Shown one piece after another: positions 4,501 to 42,775 of a stretch of 64,000 bases of DNA. Each line of letters begins with the position of its first letter. Position 1 is the stretch's first letter. Position numbers and translations under genes: made by a program. The stretch covers positions 620,001-684,000 of the forward strand of contig CAJFCJ010000012.1 in the NCBI GenBank assembly GCA_904063045.1. Direction: 5' to 3'. The DNA is from Dimorphilus gyrociliatus (Eukaryota > Animalia > Annelida). The notes beneath the pieces are model-generated. The model ran no database searches, was not told the DNA's origin, and worked only from the letters and a program-made list of their open reading frames with translations.

Positions 4501-8075
<3,575 letters not shown>

Positions 8076-9644
8076 TCTCCGTCGTCTGTTCATATGAAAC
8101 AAAGAATAAAATTAATTAACTCTTTCTCAAAATATCTTCATTCTTATCATGAAAGAAAAAAGTTTATTCAATGGGTACTATTAACAGGACACACTTTACA
8201 AAAGTGCATTAAGCCGTTAATTAGTTTAAATTACAAAAATTCTCACTTTTAAATATTAATTAAGCGCAACAGATCAGATAGGAAGATTTTAAATATTCTG
8301 TACACCTTGGAAGATAGGATAGCACAGAAAGGAACCACCCTCTAGATGGCGTATTACATTTGAGGGAAAATATAATAATGTATTCGTAATGCGGATATAA
8401 ATTAGCAAAATCATAGTTGATTTATTAGCGACATAATCTGGAAGATTTTCTCTATAAAATATGGATATTTATCAAATATTATTACTGAAAAGCCATCTGC
8501 AGACGAAAGAGCTATCCTGTATCTAGGTAAATTGTCGCGAATGATTGCAAAAGAAAGTACCATTAAAATCGAATTTCTCTCGGAACCACCCTGCTGATAA
8601 AAAGAAAAACACAAGATACGAAAAGATCAATTTCCGATAGGCTAATTCCTTTCAAAATCCAAACAAACACACGAGAATCGAGAAAGTTAAGATAAGAGAC
8701 TTTCGAAAAAAGTGCCTGATAAAGATAATACAATCGTGTTATTCTACACCAAACAGATGCTTTTTTTCGTAGACAAAGAAGGGTAAAACTATTTCAGTCT
8801 TAAAAAATACTTAATAACAACACGCGCCATAAATCCTCACAGCAAACACAGTACAATACGAGAAAAATGAAAAGATTAACAACTAAAAGGTATATAAACC
8901 TGCTTCAAATTGTACAGGTGAAGTATGTTGAAAAGTAGCGACGACCATTTTCTATTCTACTATTTTTTCTATCTAGGCACCGAAATGCGGAGAAATCAAC
9001 GGGAAAACGCACGCTTCACCTTCTCTTCGAGGAAAATGACGACAAGAGTTCCCCGCTCAGGGGTTTTATAGCAAATGCTATTGGGTTTTTGCGAGAACGA
9101 ACTAACAGTTAAAACACGCCCACATCTATATACGCTTTCTTTAATACTATACCTGAAAGGTTTTGCTAGAGCGAACTAAGGTAGTTTAATTATGATACAG
9201 CTATACCGCTTTTTTCATCTATTTTATGTCACACAAAGGTAGCGGTAGAGAGTAGCGATTGGACAATCGATCAGGTAAAAATATCCAATCATAAAATACC
9301 TGGTTGATTGACATATAGGGCGGATCGAAATTTTTTATATTTTGCCAAGAAAGTGTTACTTATTTTTCGTTAAAGCTCGATATTGTTGTAAATTTATCAA
9401 ATTAAGATATAAGCTAAGTGAAGTATTACGCTTCAAGGAAAGATCGACTTGTATTTATTTATAGAATTTTTTCTTCTCATATATATGGACCGCTTGTGGT
9501 CCGCTTAATTGAGCGTAAAAATGTTTTAACATTCGTGCATCAAATATTTAAACGAGAGTATTTGGGACAATTATATAAAAAATATATAATTATTAAAATT
9601 ATACTTTTTATTAGTTTTGGAGATAAAGTAAATGAAGAGCGAGT

Positions 9645-9666: not shown

Positions 9667-12600
9667 AAAAAGGACCTAATTAAGTTTTTAACTTTAAACT
9701 GATGAATAGCTTAAATTATGCAATTACAGAGGTTTTTATACAAGTATGTTTTTTTTAAATAGACTGTAAATAATAACCTAAATGTTCTGTTATAAAGTGT
9801 TACTTTTGAAAATTTCTATCTATATAGTTAATTTATATGCAAAGCTCTGTATTTAATCAAGAGTCATCAGTCTCCCGTAGCAGTTGGGAATACAGCATGA
9901 ATTTTCAATGAATGAAATTAATACGTCTTTTTTCTTCAAATTACAACTGCGGCTTGTCTATATAACTCAATATTTTATCTTTCTATATATCCTATGATCA
10001 AATTACGAGAGTCTTGTTAATCTCAAGGATATAAAAGCCTATAAAGGAGAAACTATCATTAATATATAAAAGGCGTGATAAACCGTAAATTAATATATGA
10101 AAGCTGCTTTGCAGGGATAGAGCAGAGTACTTTCAGAATGCATTATACTTTACATTAATATTTTGTAAAAAACAACACTTTAAAGAAGATTTTAAAAGGT
10201 ATAAATGAGAGTTGTTTTTAAGAACATATCAAAATAGAAACGTATATAAAAAGACGATATAACCTTTCCGGACACCCCTTAATGCAAACGTTTGTAAATC
10301 GTCCTTTGTCGCGCACGTGCAAGTGGGAGTGGAGAATTTCTTGACAGTTCTCTATAAAACAAGGCAATGCTTTTTGCGACGATTTTTCGTCGTCTTGGTA
10401 ACTTCGATTTTTTCCTCTTTTGGAATCAATTAGCGCTCGCGCAAACAGGTTTTTGTTAAAACATCAAAAAACGCGACAATGATAAGAATCAACGATATAA
10501 CGGTGAAGTACTCTCTAATCGTTGACTTTCGCTCTTCAAAGTTGAATGCAATACAAACTTGGGGTGAGAGAAAATTTAACGAGAACGTGTCAATTGTTTT
10601 CATTTTGGTGCTTTCTTCATCTCTCATAGGACTTTCTAATCGGTGTTCTCTAATTTAATTTTTTTTTTAACTATAAAATATCAGCTTATGATTATCTTAT
10701 AAAAACATTAAAACAATATTGACGCAGGTGCTGCAACTATTAAGAATAAGGATAAATACAATTTTTACATTTGTAGGAATAAATCCATACCCTGAATAAA
10801 TACTGTTGAAACAAAGCCCTTATTTCCGCCATTAGGCCCACATATGACATCCATCAGGAACTGCACATTGTAAACAAAACAAGAATACAAAGCCTGATGG
10901 CGCCGCAATTAGCAGCAAATTTGTAAACCAACAAAACCTGACAAAAAGAGAATTAAAGTACAAAGAAAGGAATAAAGTGGTGAACAATTCGGATATTAAA
11001 TCGTGGCGACAAAAGTTTTCCGCATCATCACCAGCAGCCCTCTTTTTCTGAAAATCACTTTTCACCTTTAATTAAATTCGCGTCATCTACATACATCACT
11101 TTTCCATCAAAGCTATAAAGATCAAACGCGACGATTGTTTAACGAAACAATAGACGCCTTTGAACGTTCTCTGACGGGATTTTTCCTCAACCCACGTGCC
11201 AGATGTCCTAAGCTGCATCAAAGAAAACAAACGCCTGTTTGCATTTGACAAACTTTATATATGCGTCGACTGGCTTTAAGTGTATTGAGAAACGTGAGTA
11301 GAAATAACCATACACCTTCGATCATGAATAACATTGTAAAACGCTGATAAAAGTAGAGTAGAGCACGCTCAAAGAAAGTTTTTAGGGAATGGGGGGAAGG
11401 GAGGTCAACCTTTAATTAAAATTGTCAAAAGTTATCCTGAGGATTTATGCAACGCCAAACACATCTATGAGGCTTGACTAAAGTTAGACTAGCCATTAAA
11501 TGAATTGGAAAAATTGTGCAGCACCAATGATACAATAAATCCAAATCAACTCAAGAAAGCTAAGGCAATTTTACGGTTTCTTGTTCTTACGAGTTTCTTT
11601 GGGTATAATTTATAAGCCGAAATATTAAATGTATCGGAAATATGGTCACTTTGAAATTAGACATTATTCCAATTGCCTTCCTTAAATCTTAAAGCATGAC
11701 CAACTCTCAAAAAACTTTATGGGAAAACTTTCAGATTTAACCCCGAGTTGAAGGGTTTTAAGTAGCTCCAAACTGGTCTTTTGTTCGTGATTTTAGTCTT
11801 CGTACCGTGACGAAATGGAGGTAATATAGGAACCATCGGTCATTCTCTAACACTTGACCTTGAAATAAGGGTTAGACAAGGTCAAGATGACCATTGACGC
11901 CGTCCCATTGTGAACGCACGTGACCAGGTGTCAAAACGTTGATTGACTTACGTCGTTTACAGACCACATGAATATTAATGTTAAAGAGCAATTAAGGTTG
12001 CTTGAACAACGAGTTAGGAGCATACTTGAAAGAGGTAATTACAGGAAGTGCAGATCACGTGGCCGGAAGTATTTTGTAGCTATACAGGCACCAGTATTTG
12101 ACTGGTATAATTGTCGTCTTCCGTCCACAAGTCCATTCCTCTTTTTTACATTGTCGTTAATATAATCGTTCAATAATTTTTGTGATATTTCCATCAAAAA
12201 AATTTCTTTGACATTTTCATTGTTCAGAGTAATACGTCTTCCATTTGAACTTGTAAAAGGGGGCGTTATTTTGTCCGTTGTTTTTACTCTCTTAAACAAA
12301 TACATTTTTATGTGGGAAAAAGAAAAATTGATGAAAAGTGCGATTGGTAAAATTTGAATAAATATTGGCAAATTCGGTAAGAGTATCTATAAAAATGACA
12401 ATTTTAGTAAGAGAATTCTTTTACTTCAAAGCTTTAGTAACTTCAATAAAGAAAACCTCTTTTGTAAGGTTTACCAGAATCGATTTTTATCTGTCCTCTA
12501 ATCCGTAGAATTGATTTAATATTAAGTTAGAAAAATAATAAACCTCTCTAGACAATAATAAAGAAGTTCTCTACCTTTGACCTCATTCTTTTCTAATAAT

Positions 12601-15600
12601 ATATTGGAGGCGGTAGCTTACAGAAAAAGATAAATAAGCAATATCTAGTTAATTTACTACAAAATATAATTGAGTTCATCAACCAAGAACGATTAGAAAT
12701 AGACTACTTCCTCATCTAAAGCAGTTATTCTTTCCTATGTCATTGTAGACTATATTCTTGTTTGTATATAATATAAGAGAGAAAAGATGGATCTACAAAG
12801 AAATTATTAGTTTGTCTTCCTTCGATGATGCCCTCGCCAACAAAGCCGTTGATACTGGATTTTTAATACAAAGTTTATCAATCTTACTCTTTTCCCTAAC
12901 GCATATATTGCAATAGTTTAATATATTTTTCACAGAATTCTAATTAACCTAAATTTTATACTAAGCAACTATATACTTTTTATTAATATAATTGTATACA
13001 CAAAGCTGACTTCCTTTAAAGAAAACTATAATTTCCTCTTGTGATTTTTGACGATAAGTAGAAAAACACCAAGCTCTATATTTTTCTATTCGAAATTCAC
13101 TAACTCGTTAATCTATAAATCAAAACGGCCGAACAAAAAGTGAGCAATAATTTCTGACACGTGCACACATAAAAACGCAAAGTCGACGCCTTTTTCAATA
13201 AATTCAAAGAGGGAAAGAGATCAAAAGATAAAAGGAAAGAGCGTCTCCAACATGGGAATTTCAACAATTTCAGCAAACAATGGTAAAGGAGGGAGAAAAA
13301 TGGGGCTGCAACGTCAACTGCAGAATTTTTTCGAAACGATACGTTGATTAGATTACTCGCTTTGTGTACACGGCGTTTCCAAGATGGCGGATACAGGCAT
13401 TATTATTAAGGTAAACTGCTCATACATATGACAAACCTGACGTCATATTATCTTCTCAGGTACTCGTGCGCATGCGTGTCGGTTTAGGTTAAATTTATCC
13501 AGGTACATAATTATCTAAACAATCCAATATTTTCTTTGAAAAACTAACCGAAGTTGGAAGTTTTTCTCGTCAGACACGCGAACGTCGGAGGGCGAGGAGC
13601 GTCGAAATACGACGCCCGATATGCAAATCAAGTGACGCCCCGAATTTGGCTGCATCGATTATTTAAAGCGCCACCTATTGCAGAAATGTCAGCACTTTAT
13701 TAGGCTTAGACAGAAAGAGAGAAATGCCGAATGAAAGGAAAACGCCTGAAGTTGTTTTTGACAAACATAAGTAAATTTAATAAACTCGATAGTTGACAAA
13801 CAACTTCGAGTTAAACAATTTTCCTTGTACAGTTTCAGTAAAGCGGATGACACACATTTTCAAATGGCGAATATAAAATAGCGATATATATCTAAGTAGA
13901 GCACAGTAGACTCATCTAGTGGAGGAGTATCACGTAAAAACTGTCATTAAATAAACTCGAAACCTTAATATACATATGAGAAGTAACTTTATGACTGGTC
14001 CGTAAATTTGACAAACTAGACTCTAAATTGAACGTCTAACTGAAATAAGAAGTCAACTGAAAAATATATTAGTTTATTAAGTAAATGAGGTCTGATTTTT
14101 GTGATAATATTAGATTAAAGTAACACTAGTCGAAAACGTAAATTGGTCCTCTTAATAAAAATTTATCTTAGTAATATTTGTGTTGCAATTTCTTATTTGC
14201 CAAAGTATTTATTTATTTGATTCTAGTGCTTTAAGCTTTAATTAGTCAGCAATCAAGTTGTTAAAATTTTATTTACTTTACTCTGAATGTTATGAACTAG
14301 TTGTTACTTTTATTTATTTACTCTTTTCAAATTAACTGAGAAAGAAAAATCAAAATTTTACTCAAAGTCGATATTGAAACCTTACTATTTCGCAAACAAT
14401 TTTCATCAGGGCGTCAGATGACTGACTGGATAGTTTACTGGTATCACGTGACCGATCTAAAATTTTATCCGACACCTGCAACAGCTGGCCGCAAACTGAC
14501 CAGCCGACATCATCAAAGGAAAGGTTCAGCCCCTAATCCAGTAATGACACAATGTTGATCAGGTAGAAAGTGCTTTTGATGTGACCCTGAATTTATTCGC
14601 GCACATGGCGTCTATTTGTGCGGGCGTTATTGCGTTATGAACGCCGCGGCGTTCTTTTTTGTCAGTTTGTCACCGATATTAGTTTGTCAGGGTTACCGGT
14701 TGTGAAAATTTGTGTGAGCAGTACATAATGCAAATTTGATCATATTTTCGCTATAGAACCCCTTCCAGCCTATTCTCTACTCCTTCACATCCAAATTACA
14801 CAAGCACCGCTTTTGAATAATTTAGTAAGTGATCTAGTAGGGAAAGTCTTATTGTTGGATAAATAGATGGATAAACAAATTATGCTTTGAAATTCTATCC
14901 AGCTTTAAGAGAAAATACATATAAAAAAAAGAGCGAAAGAGAAAGAAATATCTTAATATATAAATTAAAAGTAAAGAGAACAAGTTAGAATTTACAAGCA
15001 ATGCATCCGAGAACAAATTTCACTAAAAAGATACTTAAATTTACAAGAAAACGTTATAAGAGAAAGCGGGGAATTAGATATTGTAAATAAGTTTTAAACG
15101 ATTACCGTTGTATACTCAATGTGAATCTAATTAATCTTATCTAGACAAATTTTACTTTCAAATGTTTTTTTCTTAAGAATGCAAAATGTTACCTATAAAA
15201 AGCAACGGATAATGCAAGAAGAGATATATGCCTATTCAATACTGTTATAAGGTATGGAAGGTATAATTATATACACTTATTCTACTAATAAGCAACAACA
15301 TCGAATGTTCATATAGTTTTTAATACTATATATTTATTCCAAATATATATTCACGTAGATTAAGACACTCATATGGCGGCTTATTATGGAACCATGAATA
15401 TTTATTAAATGACCTACTAAAAAAATTCTGCAAGGTAAATTAAATATTCTGTTAGTTTCTCCTTGTGCGTACTTATTGACTTAGGTAGCTTGTTGACTAA
15501 TGATGAAACTGCATTAATGTGCGTAGAGGAACCATAGATTTTTAAAGGGAATTGACTAATTAAAAATAAGAAAATGAATCATTATAAGACACCTCCGCCA

Positions 15601-17384: not shown

Positions 17385-20300
17385 TCAACAATTGCAAGCC
17401 GTATACAACAAAGACGACAAACGGTTCATCACCTGCCTTTGCAGACGTCTTTGTGACGCCTACAAAGAAAACCGCCTGACCAGTAACTAGAACGCTTCGC
17501 TTCACTAATAAAGCTGGAAAAGCGTTCTTTGTCGCGCTAAGGCCATCTTCATTAAGCTGAGTGGCAACAAAAGCGAATTACAAACATATACAATTATTCA
17601 CCACTCGCTACACCAACGCCAAAAAAAATAAAGTATATATGCGCCCTGCAAAGACACCTTTGGGATAATCTCTCATAAAACTATCGATCCTATTTTCCAG
17701 TCTAGAATACTAACTATTAATTACCTGCACTATAATTCTGATTTCTATCCATCATACCAATATCCTCTATTCGACCTGTTGTATAACAGAAAAAATAAAC
17801 AAGTAGAAGAATTTAAGGAGGAAAAGGGAGGAGGAGAAGGAAGGAGGAGTTAAAGATAAATAATAAAATCATATTATAAAATATAAGAGGAGTAAGCGGG
17901 GGGGAGCGACGATGTATAAGAGACAGAATAGAATTGACTATCGATATATAATCTTACCGGAGAAATCGAACGTTTTTCTTCCCTTAAACATTCTGCGACT
18001 GTTACTTTTAAAGCTCTTTATCTGTATACATAAAAAAAAGAACATTTTTTTATATTCGTTTATTTACCTTCGTAAATTTATTAATTAAAAAAATTATGTT
18101 TTTAATATGATTTTTAAATGTATACGAAAGCGTTAGGCCTAATTAAAACGAGACGCACTACGTAACAAACGATCGAACGCGTAAATCAGGTCATGGACGG
18201 TTGCTAAGCAACGTACTTTTCAGGTACACCATGACGACACTATAAATTTTGCTGTAGACAGAACTATGTTACTAACAAAGTAGATTTGGTATATACTCAA
18301 ATAGAAGGTTAAATATACAACAATAGATATTCCAATTGATTGGACGATCGGACAGGTGGGTGGCGCCAATGAACACACCTGACAGAGGTGATTGGTTACT
18401 GAGACGCTGCATAGTCACATACAGAGCTACTCAATTTATCGAGAGCGGCGTTTTTCTTTCTTAGATATTGATCTAGTTGGCGCACGTTTCTTGGCGCTTG
18501 ATTTATGGAAGGGCAGCGTCGGTCGCGTTTTTTTTATATTTTGCAATAGATGAAGGCACGTAAACGGGAAACCGCTGGATTGTTTACAGAGGAGCTCATG
18601 AACTCCTGTAGAATATATTCGAACGAAACTGGAGATCTTTCGCATCTGTTCCGTTCCAGGATTTTCCGGGGATTTATAGGAACGCGATACACTTTTAGGG
18701 AATTTCTTGATTTTCTTCTTTACTGGGTTGGGGATTGACTGATCCTAGGGATTTAGTGGAACGTAATATAGTTTGAAATAAGAGAAAAAAAATTTTTTTC
18801 AATATGGTCGTATCAAGTTCGATATGTTCCTTTTAAAAACATTTTGATGCAGATAATTGATCATTTAGCATTTCATTAAAGAGGTAATATGCTGTTAAAA
18901 ACTGCATGTGAGTGTTGACAGACTGGCAGTTCTATTACGCTTTTCGGTTAATTATCATTATAAATTTTACCGATTAGTAAACATGCTTTATCGGTTTTTA
19001 TTCCTTTCAATGATATCTTTTCTTTATAGTTTAGGATTAAAAATAATCTTTTAAGTAATAACATGATTAAATTAGGAATTTTAAAGAAAAGATAATTATG
19101 CCAAAGACTTTTTATCTATATACAAAAGAAACGTTGTGGAAAGATTGTCAGTGGACTATCATAAATTGACCAAAAATAAATTCCCAAAAGATAAAAAATG
19201 ACTCTTCTATGATTTATAAAAGTAGCTCAGAATTTTTTTAGCTGGTACAGATTGACCGTTCCGCTGATAAATGACGCGTGTACGTGCGCTTGTGAATTGT
19301 ATACACCAATCACGGTGCATTGTAGTTGAAGAGTCATCAAGCCGGGTGATTAATGGCTCTTTGTTCCGTGAAAAAAATTTTTCTTCACGTTACGGAGCGT
19401 CTCCTAGAAGCCCATCTGTCTGTGTCGCACCTATAAGTGCTAGGTGACAGATTTATAGAGGAGGGCCAGGGGCCATTTTTTCATTCGATATTCGTTTAAA
19501 AGCAACGCGCAAACTGAACAGTTGGGCTACTTAATGAACGAATTAGTCACGCTTTCCAGTGTAGGTGATTCAGAGTCAATGACTGTGTAAAATATTACTG
19601 CTACACAACCATAATTTACAATTATTCTTTCAAGTGGACGAGCATAAAACTGTTTATAGACACTTGTATTTATATACGCATTGAATTTTTAAGTCTTTCT
19701 TCGACTTCCGCTTTCCATATAAACACAGTCACACTCACAAATACAAACAGACATACACACACACACTTACTCTCATACACAAACTCTGTGTGTACAGATA
19801 ATTGGGCGACAGTAGAGCAATTTTGTGATCACGTGACAGCAGTTCATCCCGATGTGACGTTACGGATGAATTCTTGCTCGCGAACGTCATTACGAACAGT
19901 AAGATATTGCAGTACAGGGTAGATTTATAACTTTATCCCAGTAAAAGTCACGTTATTTAGTCATCTACTCTACTGTGTATACATTATTATATATCGTATC
20001 TAATATCTATATAGTAGATAATATTTTACATGGTCCACACAGTTTATATATCACCTATTTTTATTTATAAGTACTTTGCTTAATAACTAGGTTTTAGCAA
20101 TCAATCTGGAAAATGGACATGCAATTTGTAGATTCATCATTTTACCTTAAAAAATATATAATTACGTACCAACGAAATTGCATTGGGTCAGCAGTACAGC
20201 ACAATACGACAATTAGGTGTCACGTTACATTTTACAAGCGCGTATTTAGTTATCCCTTTTTATAAAATTATCATTTCTCATTGTAAATTTTTTCTTATTC

Positions 20301-20563
20301 TCTGATTTTCTTTATCGACAGACTACAAAAAAAAATAGATACAGATGACAAAGGAATTACAAATATTTCCGCTATTTTGAATACAGAGAAATCATAATAA
20401 ATCAATGAAATTGATACAATATGGTGTCGGGTGACACATCACGTTTTATCAGGTCAAGATATGCTTATCAAATTATTGGAGATTTTTTCACTGATTTTCA
20501 TCACGCTTTAAAGGTTGTCCTTATGACAAAGTAAAAGTCTTACGAACGTTTTTAATCTTTCCT

Positions 20564-22574: not shown

Positions 22575-25500
22575 TTTAGCAAAATTATGTTGGCATGATG
22601 TAGAGTCCTTTAAGAAGCGCGCAAGGAAGAAAATATTGAAAATCAATGATATATATGAAATAATATTCCTTAACGGTTAAAAAAGATTAGAATATTTCCA
22701 CGGCTGCACTAAGATATACGAAATGTGGTGAAAAGTTTTAAACCAGATCATCTCATGACAAACAAGTATAAACAAAGTCATAGAAAATCTCTTATCCTTA
22801 TCAACAATTTTCGAACAGTTTTGCAGGTGTTTATACATCTTGTATGAATTAATTCGGAAATATTGTGGGAAACGACGCTAAATTCTTATTGAATTACAAT
22901 ATTATCGTTTTTAGTAAAGTAAACGAAAAATTTTCTCACAAGTGACGCCTTAAAAAAAATCTGTCTAATTGGATAAATAAACGTTTCTCTCACGAAAATC
23001 TTTACAAACCTTTATAGTCGGTATACTCAAACAAAACTGCTAGGTGGTGCAGGATAATTGACTGTGGTTTGTCAGATATCAGACTATCTCTTGGCAAACA
23101 AGTACAAACATAGTCCTATGTCTTATCTGAAACATTTTGCCAGGTGTATGTCTAAATTCGAAAAGCCGATAAAAATAAAAGCACCATTGTAAGTTTAAGG
23201 TTTGGCACTTGTTAGCCATTCTTCTCTAACTACCGACGAACAGTAATGAGTCTATTCTCCTTTAGCAATCACAAGCCTTTCGAATGTGAAAAAATATCAA
23301 ATTTCTAAGAGTCCTAGGTGTGATTTTTACGGGTGTTTTAGTCAAATATTCTATACAAAATATTATACAGTATACATCATATTGTATATTTACAATATAC
23401 AGTATTTGCATATAGGACATTATTTCTGACGTAAACGGATGCAAACGGGAACAATACGCGCAAACTCACACTTCAGGAGTGTCATTCATCTCTTTATGTG
23501 GCCGAAATTAACTGAAAACCAATTATAACAAGCCGGAATTTCCATTCTAAGGCCAATTAGTTGTTTATAATTTATAGGTATAAAAACTAAGATGGAAACT
23601 GTTGCATTGTAACTTCCGAGTTTACAATATACTGAAGAGAATTACCAAAAAAAGAGGGGAAAAATGAAATTTGAGATATTATACTTTTATGGAACATAGG
23701 ATTAATAGAACGAGTAGTGCACGTTTTATATACATGAAAGAATATTAAAGAACAAATACGGTATGAGAAAGAAAACTTCTGGCATACTAAGAAAAACATA
23801 AATATCACGTTTCTACTAACCTCCAACCAGGTACGCACCAAAAAAATGACAAAACTACCACAGTGCTACATAGTGCAAAGTTTAGATGGTTATTGGTAGA
23901 ACAAACTAAGGTGCTGACAAACAAGAGCCAACATAGACCTATCTCAGATTGCGCTCAAGTACACGTGGGAGCCTATCGAATTTCGAACCTATAGGTGTGC
24001 GAAATAGCGATATAGAAAAATTACGGCTCGTTTGGTAAACTCGTACTCGTTACGAGTTATTCACCGACAAACTGCACGACTCCCGCTTTTTTCAATAGGC
24101 TTTAATTTCGAGTGGGACACGTGAGTAGAAGGCCAATTTTAGCTATATTGATTATGAACCGAGGTGTTTGTCGGATGAGCGTGAGATGTTTGTCAATGAC
24201 GACAAAGTAAGGCAAGTGTTAGGTGAAGCGTAACTAACGTTGATAAACAATCCGTCTTCTACGAATTAACAATGCGTTACAATTCCGGAATCCGGTCGGT
24301 TTGTCAAGCCGGTTTGTCAACGGTTCACAATGGAATCGAAAGGTGATAAGGGAATAGAGATATCAGATAACGGTCCATATAGGTCTGAGTGCACTCGACG
24401 CAATTATAAACCACCCCAGCCGACCTCAGTACTATTGTTTTGTTAGAAAGGAACTTGTTACATGGCCGTTGTTTATCGCGAATCGACTCAATATCCGTAA
24501 TTGAAGCAATCTAGAAAAGAGGCCCGTATGCAAATGAGTAAACGTTCTTTTCAATTAAAGAAGTAATCAGTCCTAGTGGATCCTAAAAAGCCATGTCGGA
24601 AGAGAATCGCTTAAAGTACTAAGAAATGTATACAGTCTATATACCTTTATTAATTGATTCGATAGAAAAGGATGAATGTTTATTATCTAAAAAGAAAATA
24701 AAGCTATTTCTATTAAAGTTTTCATTAAACTAAAATTGTCTGTTTATATCATTCAAGATTCATTCAATTTTCTACATTTTATCTAGTAAATTATCCCAAA
24801 TGCGAAGTGAGCTATGTAGACCCTACTAAAAACCCTCATCGCATAATTTAATTATTCGAAATACTATTAATACCATTTATGGAACCTAAGCCATAAAGCT
24901 AGTATGATAATCATGTGACTCGTTTATATATTTTATCATGATTTGTTTCTCCTAATTTGTTATATTAAAAGGAAATAATCTACGCGCTTTGTTTATATTA
25001 CAACTTCTTTATATACAATACTGTAACAACTGTTAAACCTAGAAGGCAAACAAAGGACAAACAATGGGGTAAACTTTCAGGGAGAAATATTATTACAAAC
25101 CGACTCCCAGGTGGGCGCCGTGTACGACGAGATATGGAAATGAGAAAAACTACGTGCCAAGCAGCTTCGTCCGGGGATTCGAATGTCATCTGCATTTTCG
25201 AAACGTGCTGTTTGCCGCCAAATGGCGCAGTATTAACGTATATAGTGCTATATATAATATTTTCTCCTATATAACATAGTTACAAACTACATTTATCTCT
25301 TTATTTACCAGAGATATAAATAAGGTAAATATAATTGAAGAAAAACTAGTTATTTTAGTGAATATTAATAATTTTAGACCTATTTCAGGACCAAACTATA
25401 TATATATATATACTATATATACCAATACAGATTTATATATATATATACAGTGTGACCATTGATAGAATGAAATAAAAAGAAATCTCGCTCACACATACAC

Positions 25501-36900: not shown

Positions 36901-37417
36901 TTCAAGTTAACAATAATATCTAGAGTGCAGTTGTGAAGGCTTATAAAAGAAAAAGATGATTGACGGAAAGATAGAAATAAAAGAAGTCAAACGAAAAAAG
37001 ATAAAGAGCAACAAATAAACAATACATTTATGCAACCACAAAATTTGATGGCATAATATCAACAATATGAAATAAAATTATTCCATTTCCAAAGAATTGT
37101 TAAAATTTACATCAAGTTAACAAACATATATATATATATATTTATTATTATTATTGATGATAATAATAAGACTTTATCATAAGATTCCTAATATATAGTT
37201 AAAGATAATCCATTCAAGAACATTTTATAGTGTACATTTTGAAATATAAAACAAAAGATATTATTTATCAATACTTTTTAAAAATGAATATAGAAATTTC
37301 AGTAAAAATAATAAAAATAAACTATGTCAAGTAAATTGTTGTTTGTATTTTTGTTTACTAATTTGGAATATAGTAAACTGAGTTTCCTTTGTAGCATTTC
37401 TATTATGAAATTTGCAT

Positions 37418-37959
37418 CTAACTCATCCACATTTCTCTAAAAATTGCTGGAAATTCAATATCGGGGTAATCAGAAACCATTTGTTTCTCTTCTGACCGAT
37501 ACATGTGGCCAACTGATCTCATTCTCGTCAGCAAACGAATAAGTTTTGCTATAATAATTGGTACTTCAGCCTTCGGATATCGCTTGAGGAGTAAATATTC
37601 CAAACATAGATATATACAGAATTGAGCATCGGAAATTCGGTTTGAAATGTGGATACTATATGAAAAACATCTATCTGATGATAACAAACATGAAGCTTTC
37701 AGCATACATTCTTCTTCTGTAGTCAGATTGAAAGATTTAAACTTCATACTTAACTGAAAGACACTTTCCAAATATTCTGGATTTTGAACCTTTTATGAAT
37801 GGTATATAAGTTTAATTATTCACAGCTTTAAACAAGAGAACTAGTATACCTTCATAACATCATCAATGTGTACAGTATGTCCACACGTTGTAGTATATAA
37901 ATATTTTTCATTATTAAAGCATTTGTAACTTGAAATTAACCAAATATCCCATTTTGAAT
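37418..37959 (-). CDS. Second nuclear-receptor LBD C-terminal half (alternative terminal exons)
   Basis: Exon 37959-37850 (phase-1 start; SKWDIWLISSYKCFNNEKYLYTTTCGHTVHIDDVMK), a 60-nt GT-AG intron, then exon 37789-37418 (VQNPEYLESVFQLSMKFKSFNLTTEEECMLKASCLLSSDR..FPAIFREMWMS*, AF-2-like end). Confidence 0.88.
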
Positions 37960-37987
37960 CTAGAAAGATAAAATAATGATTATAGTA

Positions 37988-37992
<5 letters not shown>

Positions 37993-38035
<43 letters not shown>

Positions 38036-38095
38036 TATGAAGAAATATTTAGTATATAGCAATATTTTTTTGAGAGAGAGAGAGAGAGAGAGAGA
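37993..38095. repeat. Compound (AT)n and (GA)n microsatellite between the two NR LBD modules
   Basis: (AT)~18 at 37993-38029 and (GA)~12 at 38072-38095. Confidence 0.95.
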
Positions 38096-38520
38096 AAACA
38101 GACAGACATAGAAAGAAAAAGAGAAATCCCAACTGATACATAGTTTTGCAGTATTTAATCAGCAACGTAATTTTTTTTTCATTAGTTAATAAAGAAAAAA
38201 AAATTGTATTTATGAATAAATTTGTACTAATAACTGAAAACTTTTTTGTTCGGGTTTAATGACGAAAAGAAAACGTAAACAAATAATAATAATAATAATA
38301 ACAAACAAAAGATAATTGATGCATTTTAGACTTAAAAAAAGTATAGAGATTATTTTCGTATTGTACTATTTGAACACGGAATTTTTGAAATATATATTGA
38401 TTTAAATGTAGTAATAAACTGTCTTACACTGAGTAGAATATACTTGCGACTATTTTAATAATAAATAATCATAGCAAGTTTCCACCACTTTCCCGCCCTC
38501 CCTTCCGTAATATAAGTTTG

Positions 38521-41301
38521 TCACTGATTGAATAGCAGAGGTCCTAAAATTTCACCCCATTTTAACTCTGGAAATAAGTTATCGAGCATATTTAGAGTTT
38601 TTTCACGGCTACAGTAGTAGTGAAGACAGCGAACAGGAGCTAATAATTGTAGGATATGAGCACTTCTCAATGGCTCGTTTGGTCGTTGTAACTTTGACAC
38701 GTACTCCAAACATTCAATGAAATTGCTTCTAATTTCACACACTTGATCCTTCTTTGAGAGTTGTAGATCATCTGTGAACGTTTCTGATTAGTTGTTTTCG
38801 TGTGGGTTTTTTGTTTGTTGTTGTTTTATAAGATTTTCTAATGTGAATTATGAGCAGTGTTAAATATTTTCTTTAATTGTTAATGTTATTGTTATAAGTC
38901 GGGGATTAGGGTTAGCTTATCTTCTTTAGGGAAAGGCGAGAAGATCTTTAATTAGCCAGGCAACGAGCCAAACTGATCTATGAGTAAAAAAAATTAAGAC
39001 GCGTTTGCTTTCAGTGTACAGTTAGCCTTTTTAGCATACTGTCGTGCTCAATTAGAGTAAAACGAGTTGAATATCAATTATGTTGCTTATCAAATTAATA
39101 TTCATTTCGTTTAGCTATGTAGCTATTTAATTGATATAATAAGTTATTACAAGTATGATTATCGATAGATGGCGTTCCCATAGACAGACAAAGCTGCGCC
39201 ATCTGACAACTGTCTTACTAGCGAGTATAAATAATAAAATAGTAGATACTAAGTGGGTTTTTGTGTTTGTGTTTAAAAATGATTAAAAAATCTTTGAAAA
39301 CCTGTGCCTATGACGAGAACTAGGCCAAGTAAAGTGCAGTTTTCTTCCACACTTAAGTCAAGTTTTATCAAATTTTTCAAAAATTTCATTCCCTCTTCCA
39401 TTGCTTCATCATCTTCAATTCTCCTTATTTCATCAATATCATAAGCTTCGTATGTACTAGGATCTAAGAATATAGTCAAATCCGCGTTAACCGAGTGTTT
39501 AGCATCAATCATCCAAGCAGCATACCAAGATGCTAAGGAAGAAGAGAAGGCAAGTTTTTTTTGGTTGTTTTTTTTTTCAGTTTCAAGTAGGGTAGTTTCA
39601 TATTTGTTTAAATCGAGATGGGACAGTACAAAAATAAAAGAAACATAGTTGTTGTACCTTTTTGATAGAATCAATCAGAATAATATAAATGAAGAATTTA
39701 AAATTTTACTTCACATAAAATTAATTTAAATCTTTATCAAATAAATACATTAATTACCTAATTTACACAACAAATATACCAGATTAATTAGTGAAATGAT
39801 TAAATAATATATTTTAATTATAATATTGTAAAATTTTTCACTGATAGCAGATTCGATCTCTCAGATACAAGATTCCGTCCCACCCGAAGTTATTTTAAGA
39901 AATAGAAAAACTTACTTTTAATTAAAGCTATCTGATCTTCTATAGGAAGTTCCTTAAATCCAGGTACGGCTTTAGCGAAATTAATGAATCTTTTTATTGC
40001 TAATTCTAATGATGGTAGCATGTGAGTTATCATTTCCCGTCTACCATCAACATCTATGCCAGTTGAATGATAAATTTGCATATATTCTTCTTTAGATAGA
40101 TTTTTTAAAGGTCCGAACATCTGTTCTTTTATTTGTCTGCGTTCCTGTTTTTACAACAATGGTCATTTCAATATATATGATATGTGGGAAATGATGGTAC
40201 ATTTATGTAAAATTATAATATTTTTATGCGACAGATGGATATTTACTTCATTAAGTTATAAAGGTATCAATAGACAGAGATATCTAAATGCTTTTCTTAT
40301 TATCTCTAATATATAAAAATAAATTTCAATACTAACAAGGTATCTTTCTTCTAATTCAGGTATTTTTTTGTAAAATTCAGCTGTATATGGTGTTTGTTGT
40401 AAATGAACAGCTGTAATTTGATTAACAATATTTTCAATTTGATCTTGTTTCAATTCTACTTGACGTTGAATTCTTTTTATTTCTTCTATATCTTTTGTTT
40501 TCTTTTCATGAGTGTAACGCCCCGTCTTGATAGCTGTTGAATAACAATAACAATATATATAAGACTACTTTGCTTATTTACTTATATCTAATCATTCTAT
40601 TTGAGGTTAATTTCTAGGTAACCTATTAAACCCTTGCAATAAATGCAATAAAGTTCGGTAAAGCCATCAAGTGTAAAGTGTATTTTCTCCTTTAATGAAT
40701 TCATATTTCAGATACGCAATCTAGATAAATCATTGATAAAGGACTATAATCAGAGTTTTTTAAGGTTATCTAAAACCTGAGCTAATACGGTGTCTTCGAT
40801 ATTTTAAACTCGTTGGGTACCTCTAAAATTCACTATTGAGCATAACTATATTAATGTTTATTGAGACAGCCTGTTCTTTCTGAGTAGACCAACTTTATCG
40901 ATTATTCTATAGCCACATTGAAAGTTACAATCAAGAGAGTTTTTTTAACTCTTCAGGAGGAAAAGGCAATGTCTCTTTATATTAATTAAATTTCCTTTAA
41001 TAATTTATTTTGAATTGTTTGAACAGAGAATAATCAAATTAAACAAACCGTCTTTTGACATTCCAACTCCGATGCATTTCTTATATCTACATGATGCACA
41101 TGAATTTCTATTTGTCAGTTCTATAACGCATTTTCCTTCATTCGAACACTTATAATCCTCCTTTCTATGTAGACTTCTTCTAAAAAATCCTTTGCAGGCT
41201 TCGCAAGTGTTTACCCCATAGTGAAATCCACTAGCTCTCTCACCACAGACTCTACAGGGAGGCAACAGAGGCTGAGGCACTGTCGCTACCTGTGACATCA
41301 T
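38521..41301 (-). CDS. Nuclear receptor, NR1-like lophotrochozoan clade (isoform with proximal LBD C-half)
   Basis: Exons 41301-41049 (DBD: CRVCGERASGFHYGVNTCEACKGFFRRS..CRYKKCIGVGMSKD), 40533-40337 (AIKTGRYTHEKK hinge), 40144-39916 (FINFAKAVPGFKELPIEDQIALIK LBD signature), 39532-39302 and 38783-38521, in frame. The 39302 donor is weak. Confidence 0.93.
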
Positions 41302-41387
41302 TCTACTGTTGACAATGCAAAAATGACTAAATTTATCTATGTTTATCTTATTGGTCGACAATATCGTACTGTTTTTTTTGCTCAAAT

Positions 41388-41399
41388 TGCGCATGCGCA
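41388..41399. promoter_or_regulatory. NRF1-type palindrome TGCGCATGCGCA in the nuclear receptor promoter
   Basis: Perfect NRF1/Ewg consensus 87 bp upstream of the NR ATG. Confidence 0.7.
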
Positions 41400-42775
41400 G
41401 ATGTCTATTTCCTGTTATAACGAGGTGACATCTTGCGTTTGAACATTGTACTTTAGATTACAAAACTATTATTGATTATTTTAGAGATAATCTCTGAATA
41501 AAAATAGTAAAATATACTTTCAAATCTAATTTTGTCGGTCCAGACACGATAGGTTTGTTACGTTACTCGGAACTGCTCTTAAAGAGCTTTGAAGTTATGT
41601 TTACAAGTGTCCATTTAGTCATACAAATAGGCCTCTATTAACCCACTTGTACTAAAATTGCATTGATTTTCAATTTGCTTGAAGAAAATAAGAGTATTAA
41701 GACTATTTCTGCGTTAATAAAGATGACACGAACAGCAAACCATTATTACAGTTTATTACAGTACCGAATGATTATATTTAATTACGTAATTCATACATTT
41801 TTAAGCCTATACGAAAAAAAAACTGCTAAAGAAATGTATATAATAATGATATTCTTATCAATTTACTTATTTCTTACTCTTTCTAACATTAAATTTTTCA
41901 CAGAATTATGAATATTCAGAAAGATTGAATTATTCTTCTATATATATTCAATTGCCAAATTTTTCCATTACTCATTCGCTTTTCAGATTTTTTATTGTAG
42001 TTATTGACCATTTTTGATCCAAATATTACACTTTTTAGTTAACAATATACGAACATTTTTATTTTTACTTGAACAATGTTTGAATAAAGCGTTTAGTGAA
42101 CATTGTTAAGTAAAACTTATAAATATTTGGATGTGTTTGAATGGAAGCTGTATAATAATAAGGTTTTCAATATTATAACAAGTATAATAGATGACTTTTT
42201 ACTTTTAAAAGATGTCTCCATTTTCCAATGAACAATGGAGAAATATCACTTAAATAACTATATATACAGTATATACAATATATATCTTTCGTTAAATGAG
42301 TGTAAATATCATATAAGAATTATTAATTTATTATGTAAATTCTATTCAAATATTTAATAGATATTATATTTGTAATATTAATAATTAAATAGGAAGGTAT
42401 GTTGGAAAATAGAGAGGAGGAGAAAGTGTTCAACACTTAATATTTCAAACATCTGCCATTCTTAAACAGATGTTGATGAAATCGGTGACGGTATATGATG
42501 GTATATCATCTTCTAAAAGAGTTTGTGAAAAAGCTTTTAGATCAATTAGCTAAAAGAAATAGAGAATGGTTAAATTACATTCGTCCATAGTAACTAATTC
42601 AATTCATTATACAGTTAACTTTTAGTTATGTTTATTCTCATAAGTAATTTATTGTTAAAACTTGCTTACGACATAATAAGCTCATATTACTTAAAGGATG
42701 TGCAAAAATTAAGTTCTTGAACGCCCACACGGAGTAGTAACATTTAGGTAACGCAATGTTATAAAAGGATTTTAT

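What the first reader, a model, noticed from the sequence alone, without database searches (positions are those of the whole stretch)
37418..39916. One nuclear receptor gene with two mutually exclusive ligand-binding-domain C-halves
Seen: the exon ending ..QIALIK (donor 39916, phase 1) can splice in frame to either 39532 (TSWYAAWMI..) or 37959 (NSKWDIWLI..). Each path has its own downstream exon, stop and helix-12 region (GEILGPLLFNQ* versus FPAIFREMWMS*). The halves are homologous (EEGMKFLKNLIKLDLSVEENCTLL versus ESVFQLSMKFKSFNLTTEEECML) but very divergent. Only ~560 nt, mostly microsatellite, separate them, with no second DBD. Inference: partial tandem duplication gave alternative 3' ends, so one DBD is paired with two different pockets and AF-2 surfaces. 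NR isoform diversity is more usually N-terminal.
Basis: partly seen in the sequence, partly recalled or inferred. Interest (0 to 1): 0.82.

Follow-up and report, generated by a model that had tools for sequence, protein, structure and literature searches.

The report
One receptor gene, two swappable ligand-binding halves
A hormone-type receptor gene in this small marine worm carries two alternative back halves of its ligand-binding domain behind one DNA-binding front; both are kept by selection and four other annelids share the layout, but no RNA data could be read here to show both versions are made.

Summary
A minus-strand nuclear receptor gene has three common exons (41301-39916). They are followed by two homologous half-LBD modules of exactly 160 aa each, Ca (39532-38521) and Cb (37959-37418). 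Both join the phase-1 donor at 39916 in frame, and each has its own stop.

- **Orthologous contig (L001):** a related species keeps all seven exons at identical lengths with GT/AG sites. dN/dS is 0.31 for Ca and 0.17 for Cb, while most introns and the spacer are randomised.
- **Which half is ancestral:** Cb, the distal one. Full-length orthologues in annelids, molluscs, a brachiopod and a nemertean all read ..DQIALIK followed by a Cb-like half.
- **Same array elsewhere:** Capitella has 3 modules. Paralvinella, Lamellibrachia and an unnamed GC-poor, annelid-like eukaryote on metagenome contigs each have at least 2. The extra modules in the three named genomes are annotated as orphan LBD fragments or not at all.
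- **Single-exon version:** Lingula and oyster swap one exon at the same junction, and both oyster forms exist as transcripts.
- **AF-2:** Ca has lost the AF-2 glutamate; Cb keeps it.

The scan had noted other alternative-cassette receptor genes in this genome, but not this locus.

The parts
41049..41301 (-). Exon e1: start codon and DNA-binding domain (P-box CEACKG); donor in phase 1
   Evidence: Pfam zf-C4 at E 5e-30. 95% aa identity to relative L001 2352-2601, with dN/dS 0.02.
40337..40533 (-). Exon e2: T/A-box (AIKTGRYTHEKKT), hinge and start of the LBD
   Evidence: Splice sites and the 197-nt length are conserved in L001. dN/dS is 0.035.
39916..40144 (-). Exon e3: LBD helices about H1-H4, ending FAKAVPGFKELPIEDQIALIK. 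This is the shared phase-1 donor used by both modules.
   Evidence: Pfam PF00104 positions 14-50, 22.3 bits. The same junction is seen in all orthologues.
39302..39532 (-). Exon e4a: first exon of proximal module Ca (about H5-H8); phase 1 in and phase 1 out
   Evidence: The 231-nt length and AG/GT sites are conserved in L001 4395-4625. dN/dS is 0.35. The intron position matches all Capitella modules.
38521..38771 (-). Exon e5a: second exon of Ca (about H9-H12) with its stop codon. The AF-2 region reads WGEILGPLLF and lacks the family glutamate.
   Evidence: The 251-nt length is conserved in L001 5137-5387. dN/dS is 0.25.
38454..38459 (-). ATTAAA, 62 nt after stop A: candidate proximal poly(A) signal
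   Evidence: Motif scan. The relative has AATAAA 3 nt after its stop A. This is weak evidence, because such hexamers are common in AT-rich DNA.
37960..38520 (-). Inter-module spacer, which is an intron for path B. Not conserved; it holds three short microsatellites.
   Evidence: 53% identity to the relative against 50% for a shuffled control. TRF result. No conserved exon and no conserved in-frame ATG.
37850..37959 (-). Exon e4b: first exon of distal module Cb (H5 to the beta-turn region); phase-1 acceptor
   Evidence: The 110-nt length and AG/GT sites are conserved in L001 5862-5971. dN/dS is 0.07. It carries the type-1 signature TTCGHTVHIDD, compared with THVCGYTLHIDE in orthologues.
37418..37789 (-). 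Exon e5b: remainder of Cb (H7-H12) with its stop codon. The AF-2 reads FPAIFREMW, which matches the family consensus.
   Evidence: The 372-nt length is conserved in L001 6074-6445. dN/dS is 0.20. The nearest relatives found by whole-library HMMER are the C-termini of full-length receptors.
39842..39863 (-). Conserved intronic element A, 53 nt downstream of the e3 donor
   Evidence: It is the only conserved block in the part of intron 3 that was analysed, with 20/22 identity to the relative at the same offset. It is complementary to element B.
38121..38135 (-). Conserved element B in the spacer, 161 nt upstream of the e4b acceptor. It is a candidate pairing partner of element A.
   Evidence: 15/15 identical in the relative within an otherwise unalignable spacer. 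The A:B duplex is -12.1 kcal/mol, in the top 0.08% of 2501 background 15-mers; in the relative it is -10.1, top 1%.
38772..39301 (-). Intron inside module Ca; unusually conserved non-coding sequence
   Evidence: 66% identity with few gaps against 44% for a shuffled control, while the other introns sit at control level. No Rfam match.

Best explanation
This is one nuclear receptor gene of a lophotrochozoan NR1 group. Its three 5' exons encode the DBD, the hinge and LBD helices H1-H4. These exons are spliced to one of two tandem 3' modules, and each module encodes a complete second half of the LBD (H5-H12) with its own stop codon.

**Path B** runs 39916 to 37959 and skips the whole proximal module together with its poly(A) site. 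It gives the canonical receptor: Cb is the orthologue of the C-half found in full-length transcripts of other annelids, and it keeps the AF-2 motif with its glutamate.

**Path A** runs 39916 to 39532 and ends at the proximal stop and poly(A) site. It puts the same DBD on a fast-evolving but still constrained half. That half has a different pocket lining, a different H10 dimer surface, and an AF-2 that has lost the PPL..E motif.

- Inferred: isoform A binds the same DNA sites but responds differently. Most likely it cannot recruit coactivators through the classical charge clamp.
- Inferred: the choice is a competition between the proximal acceptor and poly(A) site on one hand and splicing to the distal acceptor on the other. 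It may be helped by pairing of two conserved intronic elements that would loop out module A.
- Shown: the anatomy, the homology, purifying selection on both modules, and conservation of the array in annelids.
- Not shown: the two RNA junctions in this species.
For: 1. **Anatomy.** Both acceptors are in frame with the phase-1 donor, each path has its own stop, and both halves are 160 aa.
2. **Orthologous contig L001 from a related species.** All seven exons have identical lengths and GT/AG sites. NG86 dN/dS is 0.04 for the common exons, 0.31 for Ca (Fisher p 1e-7) and 0.17 for Cb (p 2e-13). Identity by codon position follows pos2 > pos1 > pos3. Introns 1, 2 and 4B, the spacer and the 3'UTR are no more alike than shuffled controls.
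3. **No independent start.** There is no conserved in-frame ATG or exon upstream of e4b or e4a.
4. **Cb is canonical.** Whole-library HMMER and the word search find full-length receptors reading common part plus a Cb-like half. These include Capitella CAPTEDRAFT_219555, Lamellibrachia, Lingula, Lineus, many molluscs, and uninterrupted ORFs on mRNA-like Logan contigs such as L009.
5. **The array recurs in the same gene.** Capitella L006 has three intact modules with phase-1 acceptors and their own stops. Paralvinella L008 has two and Lamellibrachia L011 has two. ENA contigs L013 and L015 hold one complete module plus the first exon of a second.
6. **Swapping at this junction is expressed elsewhere.** Lingula RefSeq isoforms, and oyster XP_011431631 and XP_011431632, differ only in a block of about 76 aa right after the junction. 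Both oyster forms occur as complete 478-aa and 480-aa ORFs on RNA-type contigs.
7. **AF-2.** The family consensus is [FI]PPLxxE[IM]W. Cb reads FPAIFREMW. Ca reads WGEILGPLLF in the window and WGDLINNLIF in the relative.
8. **Candidate RNA bridge.** Conserved elements A and B are complementary to each other.
Against:
- No protein of the window's own genome came back from any protein search, whether annotated or transcript-derived. Expression of this gene is therefore undocumented here.
- No annelid was found with transcripts of two module types from one species.
- The poly(A) hexamers are weak evidence in 31% GC DNA.
- The e4a donor is also phase 1, so an e4a to e4b join would be in frame and cannot be excluded from sequence alone.
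- The A:B pairing is only 8+3 bp and has no compensatory change.
- Neither isoform could be folded, because a spliced protein has no reference in these tools.
Confidence: 0.72

Rival explanations
1. Only the canonical distal path is used to make a protein. The proximal module Ca is a regulatory or decoy terminal exon pair, for example premature termination used to tune receptor dosage, and not a functional alternative LBD half.
For: Ca evolves faster (65% against 80% aa identity, dN/dS 0.31 against 0.17) and has lost the AF-2 motif. Transcripts in other annelids show only the type-1 (Cb-like) half. The intron inside Ca is conserved as non-coding sequence, which fits a regulatory role.
Against: dN/dS is significantly below 1 (p 1e-7), the codon-position pattern is that of coding sequence, and there are no indels over 482 nt at saturated neutral divergence. 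Helix-by-helix colinearity with family LBDs also argues for a constrained protein. A mere terminator would not need 160 conserved codons.
Confidence: 0.12
2. The distal module is a separate transcription unit with its own promoter, encoding a DBD-less half-LBD protein, as public annotations of other annelids model such modules.
For: Capitella, Paralvinella and Lamellibrachia annotations list the extra modules as stand-alone 129-179 aa 'NR LBD domain-containing' proteins.
Against: The coding constraint starts exactly at the phase-1 acceptor, where e4b has dN/dS 0.07. No in-frame ATG is conserved upstream, and the relative has none before a stop at -70. The spacer has no conserved exon. H5-H12 alone lacks H1-H4 of the fold. 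In all full-length orthologues this half follows the e3-type exon.
Confidence: 0.05
3. Only the proximal path is used, and the distal module is a relic of a partial duplication.
For: It lies after a complete ORF with a stop and a plausible poly(A) signal.
Against: Cb is the more constrained module (dN/dS 0.17, 80% aa identity, no indels). It is the orthologue of the canonical half and keeps the AF-2 consensus.
Confidence: 0.03
4. A hybrid transcript joins e4a to e4b (both junctions are phase 1), giving a protein with a duplicated H5-H8 segment.
For: The join would be in frame.
Against: There is no precedent among the orthologues retrieved, and the product would break the LBD fold. In Lingula and oyster the equivalent exons are used one at a time in every model and transcript seen.
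Confidence: 0.02

Closest known systems
Mutually exclusive LBD exon in the orthologous gene of Crassostrea (Magallana) gigas (XP_011431631 / XP_011431632) and Lingula anatina (XP_013414356-363)
   Same: It is the same gene family and the same phase-1 junction after ..DQxxLIK. The alternative pieces are homologous and tandemly duplicated, and they replace pocket-lining helices H5-H8. Both oyster forms are seen as transcripts.
   Different: There only one exon of about 76 aa is swapped, and H9-H12 with the stop codon are shared, which is a classical mutually exclusive exon. Here and in other annelids the whole H5-H12 half is swapped, with its own stop and 3' end. I found no paper describing either case.
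TR-alpha1/TR-alpha2 (THRA) and GR-alpha/GR-beta (NR3C1) alternative 3' exons (established knowledge, not tested here)
   Same: One DBD is combined with alternative C-termini chosen by alternative 3' exon and poly(A) use. One variant lacks a working AF-2 or helix 12 and can act as a non-activating competitor.
   Different: In those genes the alternative tail is short and unrelated to an LBD. Here the alternative is a full, homologous, selectively maintained half-LBD, so it may keep a pocket of its own.
Tandem-exon-duplication mutually exclusive splicing with docking/selector RNA pairing (Dscam1 exon 6, 14-3-3 zeta; established knowledge)
   Same: Homologous duplicated coding units are used one at a time. 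Conserved complementary intronic elements lie next to the shared donor and upstream of a distal acceptor.
   Different: The units here are two-exon terminal modules with stops. Only one candidate pairing was found, it has 8+3 bp, and it is unproven.
Alternative-cassette receptor genes noted earlier in this genome (s1-080184, s1-080174)
   Same: They come from the same genome and follow the same theme: one shared 5' exon feeding alternative nuclear-receptor 3' cassettes.
   Different: Those cassettes carry most of the DBD plus a whole LBD. Here the DBD and the first LBD helices are constant and only half of the LBD is exchanged. I did not re-test those findings.

Membership tests
Nuclear receptor superfamily | C4 double zinc-finger DNA-binding domain | tested here: met
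   PF00105 at E 5e-30, 104 bits against a cutoff of 21.1, on exon e1.
Nuclear receptor superfamily | Ligand-binding domain (PF00104) colinear from H1 to H12 | tested here: inconclusive
   Exon pieces had to be scanned apart. Exon e3 scores 22.3 bits, just under the cutoff of 23.5, and the four C-half exons give no Pfam hit on their own. Full-length orthologues with the same layout pass, at 42-57 bits. Both halves align helix by helix with them. The spliced proteins could not be submitted because they have no reference.
Lophotrochozoan NR1 group containing Capitella CAPTEDRAFT_219555 and oyster XP_011431631 (possibly NR1P of Vogeler 2014) | Orthology of the common part and C-half; P-box CEACKG; AIKTGRYTHEKKT; junction DQIALIK | tested here: met
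   The common part is 58-67% identical to annelid members over the last 110 aa. Cb falls inside the annelid clade, supported at 98/97 in the first tree. The name NR1P itself is not verified, because the paper's supplements hold no matching sequence.
Alternative last-exon / alternative 3' module gene | One donor compatible in frame with two or more downstream acceptors, each path with its own stop | tested here: met
   The same holds in relative L001 and in the three Capitella modules.
Alternative last-exon / alternative 3' module gene | Both alternatives maintained by purifying selection | tested here: met
   dN/dS is 0.31 and 0.17, both significantly below 1, at saturated neutral divergence.
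Alternative last-exon / alternative 3' module gene | Both junctions present in RNA of the organism | not testable with these tools
No transcript-derived protein of this species was found in the protein collections.
Classical mutually exclusive exons from tandem exon duplication | Adjacent homologous internal exons of the same length and phase, flanked by shared constitutive exons on both sides | tested here: not met
   Homology and equal total length are met. However, the units are terminal two-exon modules with different internal intron positions and no shared downstream exon. The Lingula and oyster orthologues do meet this definition.
TR-alpha2 / GR-beta type non-activating C-terminal variant | Variant lacks the AF-2 core (PhiPhi-x-E-PhiPhi) while sharing the DBD | tested here: met
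   This is tested at sequence level only. Ca has P (window) or N (relative) at the position of the family's invariant Glu, and it lacks PPL. Function was not tested.

The most novel reading that the evidence does not exclude
An old system, annelid-wide and perhaps lophotrochozoan-wide, in which one nuclear receptor gene keeps a single DBD and exchanges the pocket, dimer-interface and AF-2 half of its LBD among 2-3 tandem, selectively maintained modules by alternative splicing. Long-range intronic RNA pairing would help choose the module. If so, one set of DNA targets is wired to several ligands or to opposite transcriptional outputs. Public annotations have missed this and list the modules as orphan LBD fragments.
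Probability: 0.5. Interest if true: 0.85.

Novelty: new variant of a known kind. Interest (0 to 1): 0.74.

Why it matters
Nuclear receptors are usually diversified by gene duplication or by N-terminal isoforms. The known C-terminal variants, TR-alpha2 and GR-beta, replace the end of the LBD with unrelated sequence.

Here a complete, homologous half of the LBD is exchanged behind a constant DBD. That half carries the pocket lining, the H10 dimer surface and AF-2. The arrangement has been kept across deep annelid divergences, and a single-exon version of it is expressed in oyster.

If both products are made, this is a natural domain-swap experiment. It would show how much of ligand and cofactor specificity lies in H5-H12, and how one response-element set can be switched between activating and non-activating receptors.

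It also flags a systematic annotation error. The orphan 'NR LBD domain-containing' fragments next to this gene in the Capitella, Paralvinella and Lamellibrachia annotations are unrecognised alternative modules. Receptor counts based on such fragments are therefore inflated, and isoform counts are too low.

Tried and rejected
   - After that I sent no reference containing those places to any database or search tool.
   - Local scripts that read the whole window file did include them in sandbox alignments.
   - They were deliberately left out of the intron analyses.
2. **Pfam on single exons.** It does not recognise either C-half.
3. **Proteins of this species.** I searched for an annotated or transcript-derived protein of this species carrying either junction. 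None came back. The Dimorphilus proteome is in the collection, because the 30% paralogue DgyrCDS1373 was returned, but this gene's product was not.
4. **Two module types in one annelid.** I looked for transcripts of two module types from a single annelid species and found none. Only Lingula and oyster pairs turned up.
5. **Origin of Ca.** The best tree places Ca with type-2 modules (84/89). AU tests do not reject a Ca+Cb clade (p 0.31 and 0.20) or other placements. In addition, e4a alone looks type-1-like and e5a looks type-2-like. The origin stays unresolved.
6. **Third module.** I checked for a third module or a second DBD in the window. There is none.
7. **Rfam.** A scan of 37000-39530 gave only chance-level hits.
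8. **Literature.** I found no description of alternative half-LBD modules or of the oyster and Lingula isoforms.
9. **Structure prediction.** Folding of the two isoforms was left out. A spliced protein has no reference here, and long sequences may not be typed.
Full report
**Anatomy**

The region holds one nuclear receptor gene on the minus strand.

| Exon | Window coordinates | Content |
|---|---|---|
| e1 | 41301-41049 | ATG and DBD; Pfam zf-C4 E 5e-30; P-box CEACKG |
| e2 | 40533-40337 | T/A box, hinge |
| e3 | 40144-39916 | first LBD helices, ending FAKAVPGFKELPIEDQIALIK plus one base; donor GTAAGT, phase 1 |
| e4a + e5a (module Ca) | 39532-39302, 38771-38521 | proximal C-half, own stop |
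| e4b + e5b (module Cb) | 37959-37850, 37789-37418 | distal C-half, own stop |

- Both modules start with a phase-1 AG acceptor and encode exactly 160 residues. Both products are therefore 386 aa.
- The halves are colinear homologues: 20% identity over 137 aa, pairwise E 4e-8.
- The spacer is 561 nt. Only 17% of it is microsatellite by TRF.
- tblastn with the gene's own parts and with foreign modules finds no other receptor piece in the 64 kb.

**Selection**

A word search with exon e5b found one Logan ORF at 80% identity. Its contigs are L001, at 7.1 kb, and four shorter ones. They are the orthologous, unspliced locus of a related species.

- All seven exons are present with identical lengths (250 nt for e1 counted from the second ATG, then 197, 229, 231, 251, 110 and 372 nt) and conserved GT/AG sites.
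- Nei-Gojobori dN/dS values are below. Fisher tests against neutrality give 1e-7 for Ca and 2e-13 for Cb.

| Segment | dN/dS | aa identity |
|---|---|---|
| Common exons | 0.04 | 92% |
| Ca | 0.31 | 65% |
| Cb | 0.17 | 80% |

- Introns 1, 2 and 4B, the spacer and the distal 3'UTR are no more alike than shuffled controls (0.48-0.56 against 0.48-0.53).
- Exon identity by codon position follows the coding pattern pos2 > pos1 > pos3.
- At this divergence an unused ORF of 160 codons would not survive, so both modules encode protein.
- Constraint on Cb begins exactly at the acceptor, where e4b has dN/dS 0.07.
- No in-frame ATG is conserved upstream of either module, and the spacer holds no conserved exon.
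- Neither half has a DBD or helices H1-H4. The only way to express either as part of a folded LBD is to splice it to e3.

**Which half is canonical**

- A HMMER scan of 1.84 billion representatives with e5b returned the C-termini of full-length receptors.
- A word search with the best of these, P0008, returned orthologues from Capitella, Lamellibrachia, Owenia, Lingula, Lineus and many molluscs.
- All of them read ..DQxxLIK followed by a Cb-like half that ends [FI]PPLxxE[IM]W.
- Several are uninterrupted ORFs on mRNA-like contigs. One example is L009, with a 339-nt leader, a 442-codon ORF and a 1.4-kb trailer.
- The distal module is therefore the ancestral partner of e3. The 39916>37959 join recreates the canonical protein, and the proximal module is the extra one.

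**The array is not private**

| Locus | Species | Modules after the common exons |
|---|---|---|
| L006 | Capitella teleta | 3 intact two-exon modules: M1 7276-7794, M2 12168-12707, M3 14223-14845; each with a phase-1 acceptor, an internal phase-1 intron at the ..T\|DR position, and its own stop |
| L008 | Paralvinella palmiformis | 2 modules |
| L011 | Lamellibrachia satsuma | 2 modules |
| L013 / L015 | unnamed GC-poor annelid-like eukaryote (ENA contigs) | 1 complete module plus the first exon of a second |

- In Capitella the annotation uses M2, ignores M1, and lists M3 as a separate 129-aa protein.
- In the Paralvinella and Lamellibrachia annotations the extra modules are likewise listed as orphan 'NR LBD' fragments.
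- A tree of C-halves separates a type-1 set from a type-2 set.
  - Type 1 holds Capitella M1, Paralvinella module 1, the P0008 group, and Cb at 81/55 support.
  - Type 2 holds Capitella M2 and M3, Lamellibrachia, the P0031 and P0003 groups, and Ca at 84/89 support.
- Ca shares the RP[ND]EPL signature with type 2.
- AU tests do not reject a local Ca+Cb duplication (p 0.31 and 0.20). The age of Ca is therefore open.
- Elsewhere the type-1 module comes first. Here it is distal.
- Ca keeps the ancestral intron position. Cb has lost that intron and has a different one at VMK|VQ.

**Expression of such swaps elsewhere**

- Lingula RefSeq isoforms of the orthologue are identical except for a block of about 76 aa right after the junction. 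The two versions of the block are 24% identical to each other.
- In the Lingula locus the two exons lie about 35-45 nt apart (L007).
- Oyster XP_011431631 and XP_011431632 differ in the same way. Both forms occur as complete 480-aa and 478-aa ORFs on several Logan contigs of 1.5-2.6 kb, which is transcript-level evidence.
- I found no paper describing any of this.

**Mechanism and consequence (inferred)**

- The junction lies between H4 and H5. The modules therefore replace the beta-turn, the H6-H7 pocket wall, the H9-H10 dimer surface, and H12.
- Cb keeps the AF-2 consensus, reading FPAIFREMW.
- Ca has lost PPL and the charge-clamp glutamate in both species. This predicts a receptor that binds the same sites but does not recruit coactivators in the classical way, comparable to TR-alpha2 or GR-beta. 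It may still have a pocket of its own.
- The choice would be made between two routes. One is use of the proximal acceptor and poly(A) site: ATTAAA lies 62 nt after stop A, and AATAAA lies 3 nt after it in the relative. The other is splicing across 1.96 kb to e4b.
- Two conserved islands in otherwise randomised non-coding sequence are complementary to each other.
  - Element A is at 39863-39842, 53 nt after the e3 donor.
  - Element B is at 38135-38121, 161 nt before e4b.
  - The duplex is -12.1 kcal/mol, in the top 0.08% of background. In the relative it is -10.1 for the core and -26 with an extra arm.
  - This fits a looping-out bridge that favours path B. I rate it at about 0.3, because no compensatory change is available.

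**Limits**

- I sent no reference containing those places to any search tool afterwards. Sandbox scripts that read the whole window file did include them. The intron analyses left them out.
- No protein of this species for this gene was returned by any search.
- Spliced isoforms could not be folded or run through Pfam as wholes, because they have no reference.
- The species name (Dimorphilus gyrociliatus) comes from earlier notes of the scan, and I did not verify it.

**Verdict**

- Two corrections apply: the distal half is the canonical one, and the architecture is old and shared among annelids.
- Earlier notes of the scan describe other alternative-cassette receptor genes in this genome (s1-080184, s1-080174) and an RNA-pairing switch in a glutamate receptor (s1-081024). 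None of them concerns this locus.

Noticed in passing
L006:7276-7794, 12168-12707, 14223-14845 (Capitella teleta KB292570.1): There are three intact alternative half-LBD modules behind one set of common exons. The public model CAPTEDRAFT_219555 uses only the second. The first is unannotated inside an 'intron', and the third is a separate 129-aa gene model.
   Followed up: yes
L008:13126-16524 and 18734-20509; L011:14773-18331 and 23494-24998: Paralvinella palmiformis and Lamellibrachia satsuma each carry two tandem C-half modules after the e3-type exon. The downstream ones are annotated as orphan LBD-only proteins of 148-179 aa.
   Followed up: partly
L007:8820-9053, 9088-9330, repeated at 10820-11053, 11088-11330 (Lingula anatina): The two mutually exclusive LBD exons lie only about 35-45 nt apart. 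That is too close for both to be spliced in, which would be a steric mechanism. The pair is repeated exactly 2000 nt downstream with 1-2% differences, either as a real duplication or as an assembly artefact.
   Followed up: partly
window 38772-39301 (intron inside module Ca): This intron is 66% identical to the relative with few gaps (shuffled control 44%), while the other introns that could be compared whole are at control level. Several blocks of 14-45 nt are nearly invariant, including the purine-rich 45 nt before the e5a acceptor. It has no Rfam match. It may be a splicing-control region or another embedded element.
   Followed up: partly
window 41302-41601 (5' flank of the ATG): The 300 nt upstream of the start codon are 65% identical to the relative (control 48%), which suggests a conserved promoter or 5'UTR. 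An in-frame ATG at 41394 would add 31 residues if the transcript starts further upstream.
   Followed up: no
window 37790-37849 versus L001:5972-6073: Module Cb has lost the ancestral intron at the ..|DR position, which is kept in Ca and in all Capitella modules. It has a different, short intron (60 nt here, 102 nt in the relative) at VMK|VQ.
   Followed up: partly
window 37418-41301 (whole gene): No protein of the window's own genome was returned for this gene by any search. The paralogue DgyrCDS1373 (P0005, 30% identity to e5b) of the presumed species is in the collection. The gene may therefore be missing or fragmented in the public annotation.
   Followed up: partly
window 39546-39585: An A-rich, low-complexity stretch in intron 3 tripped the read tool's filter and blocked the only read-laying run.
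   Followed up: no
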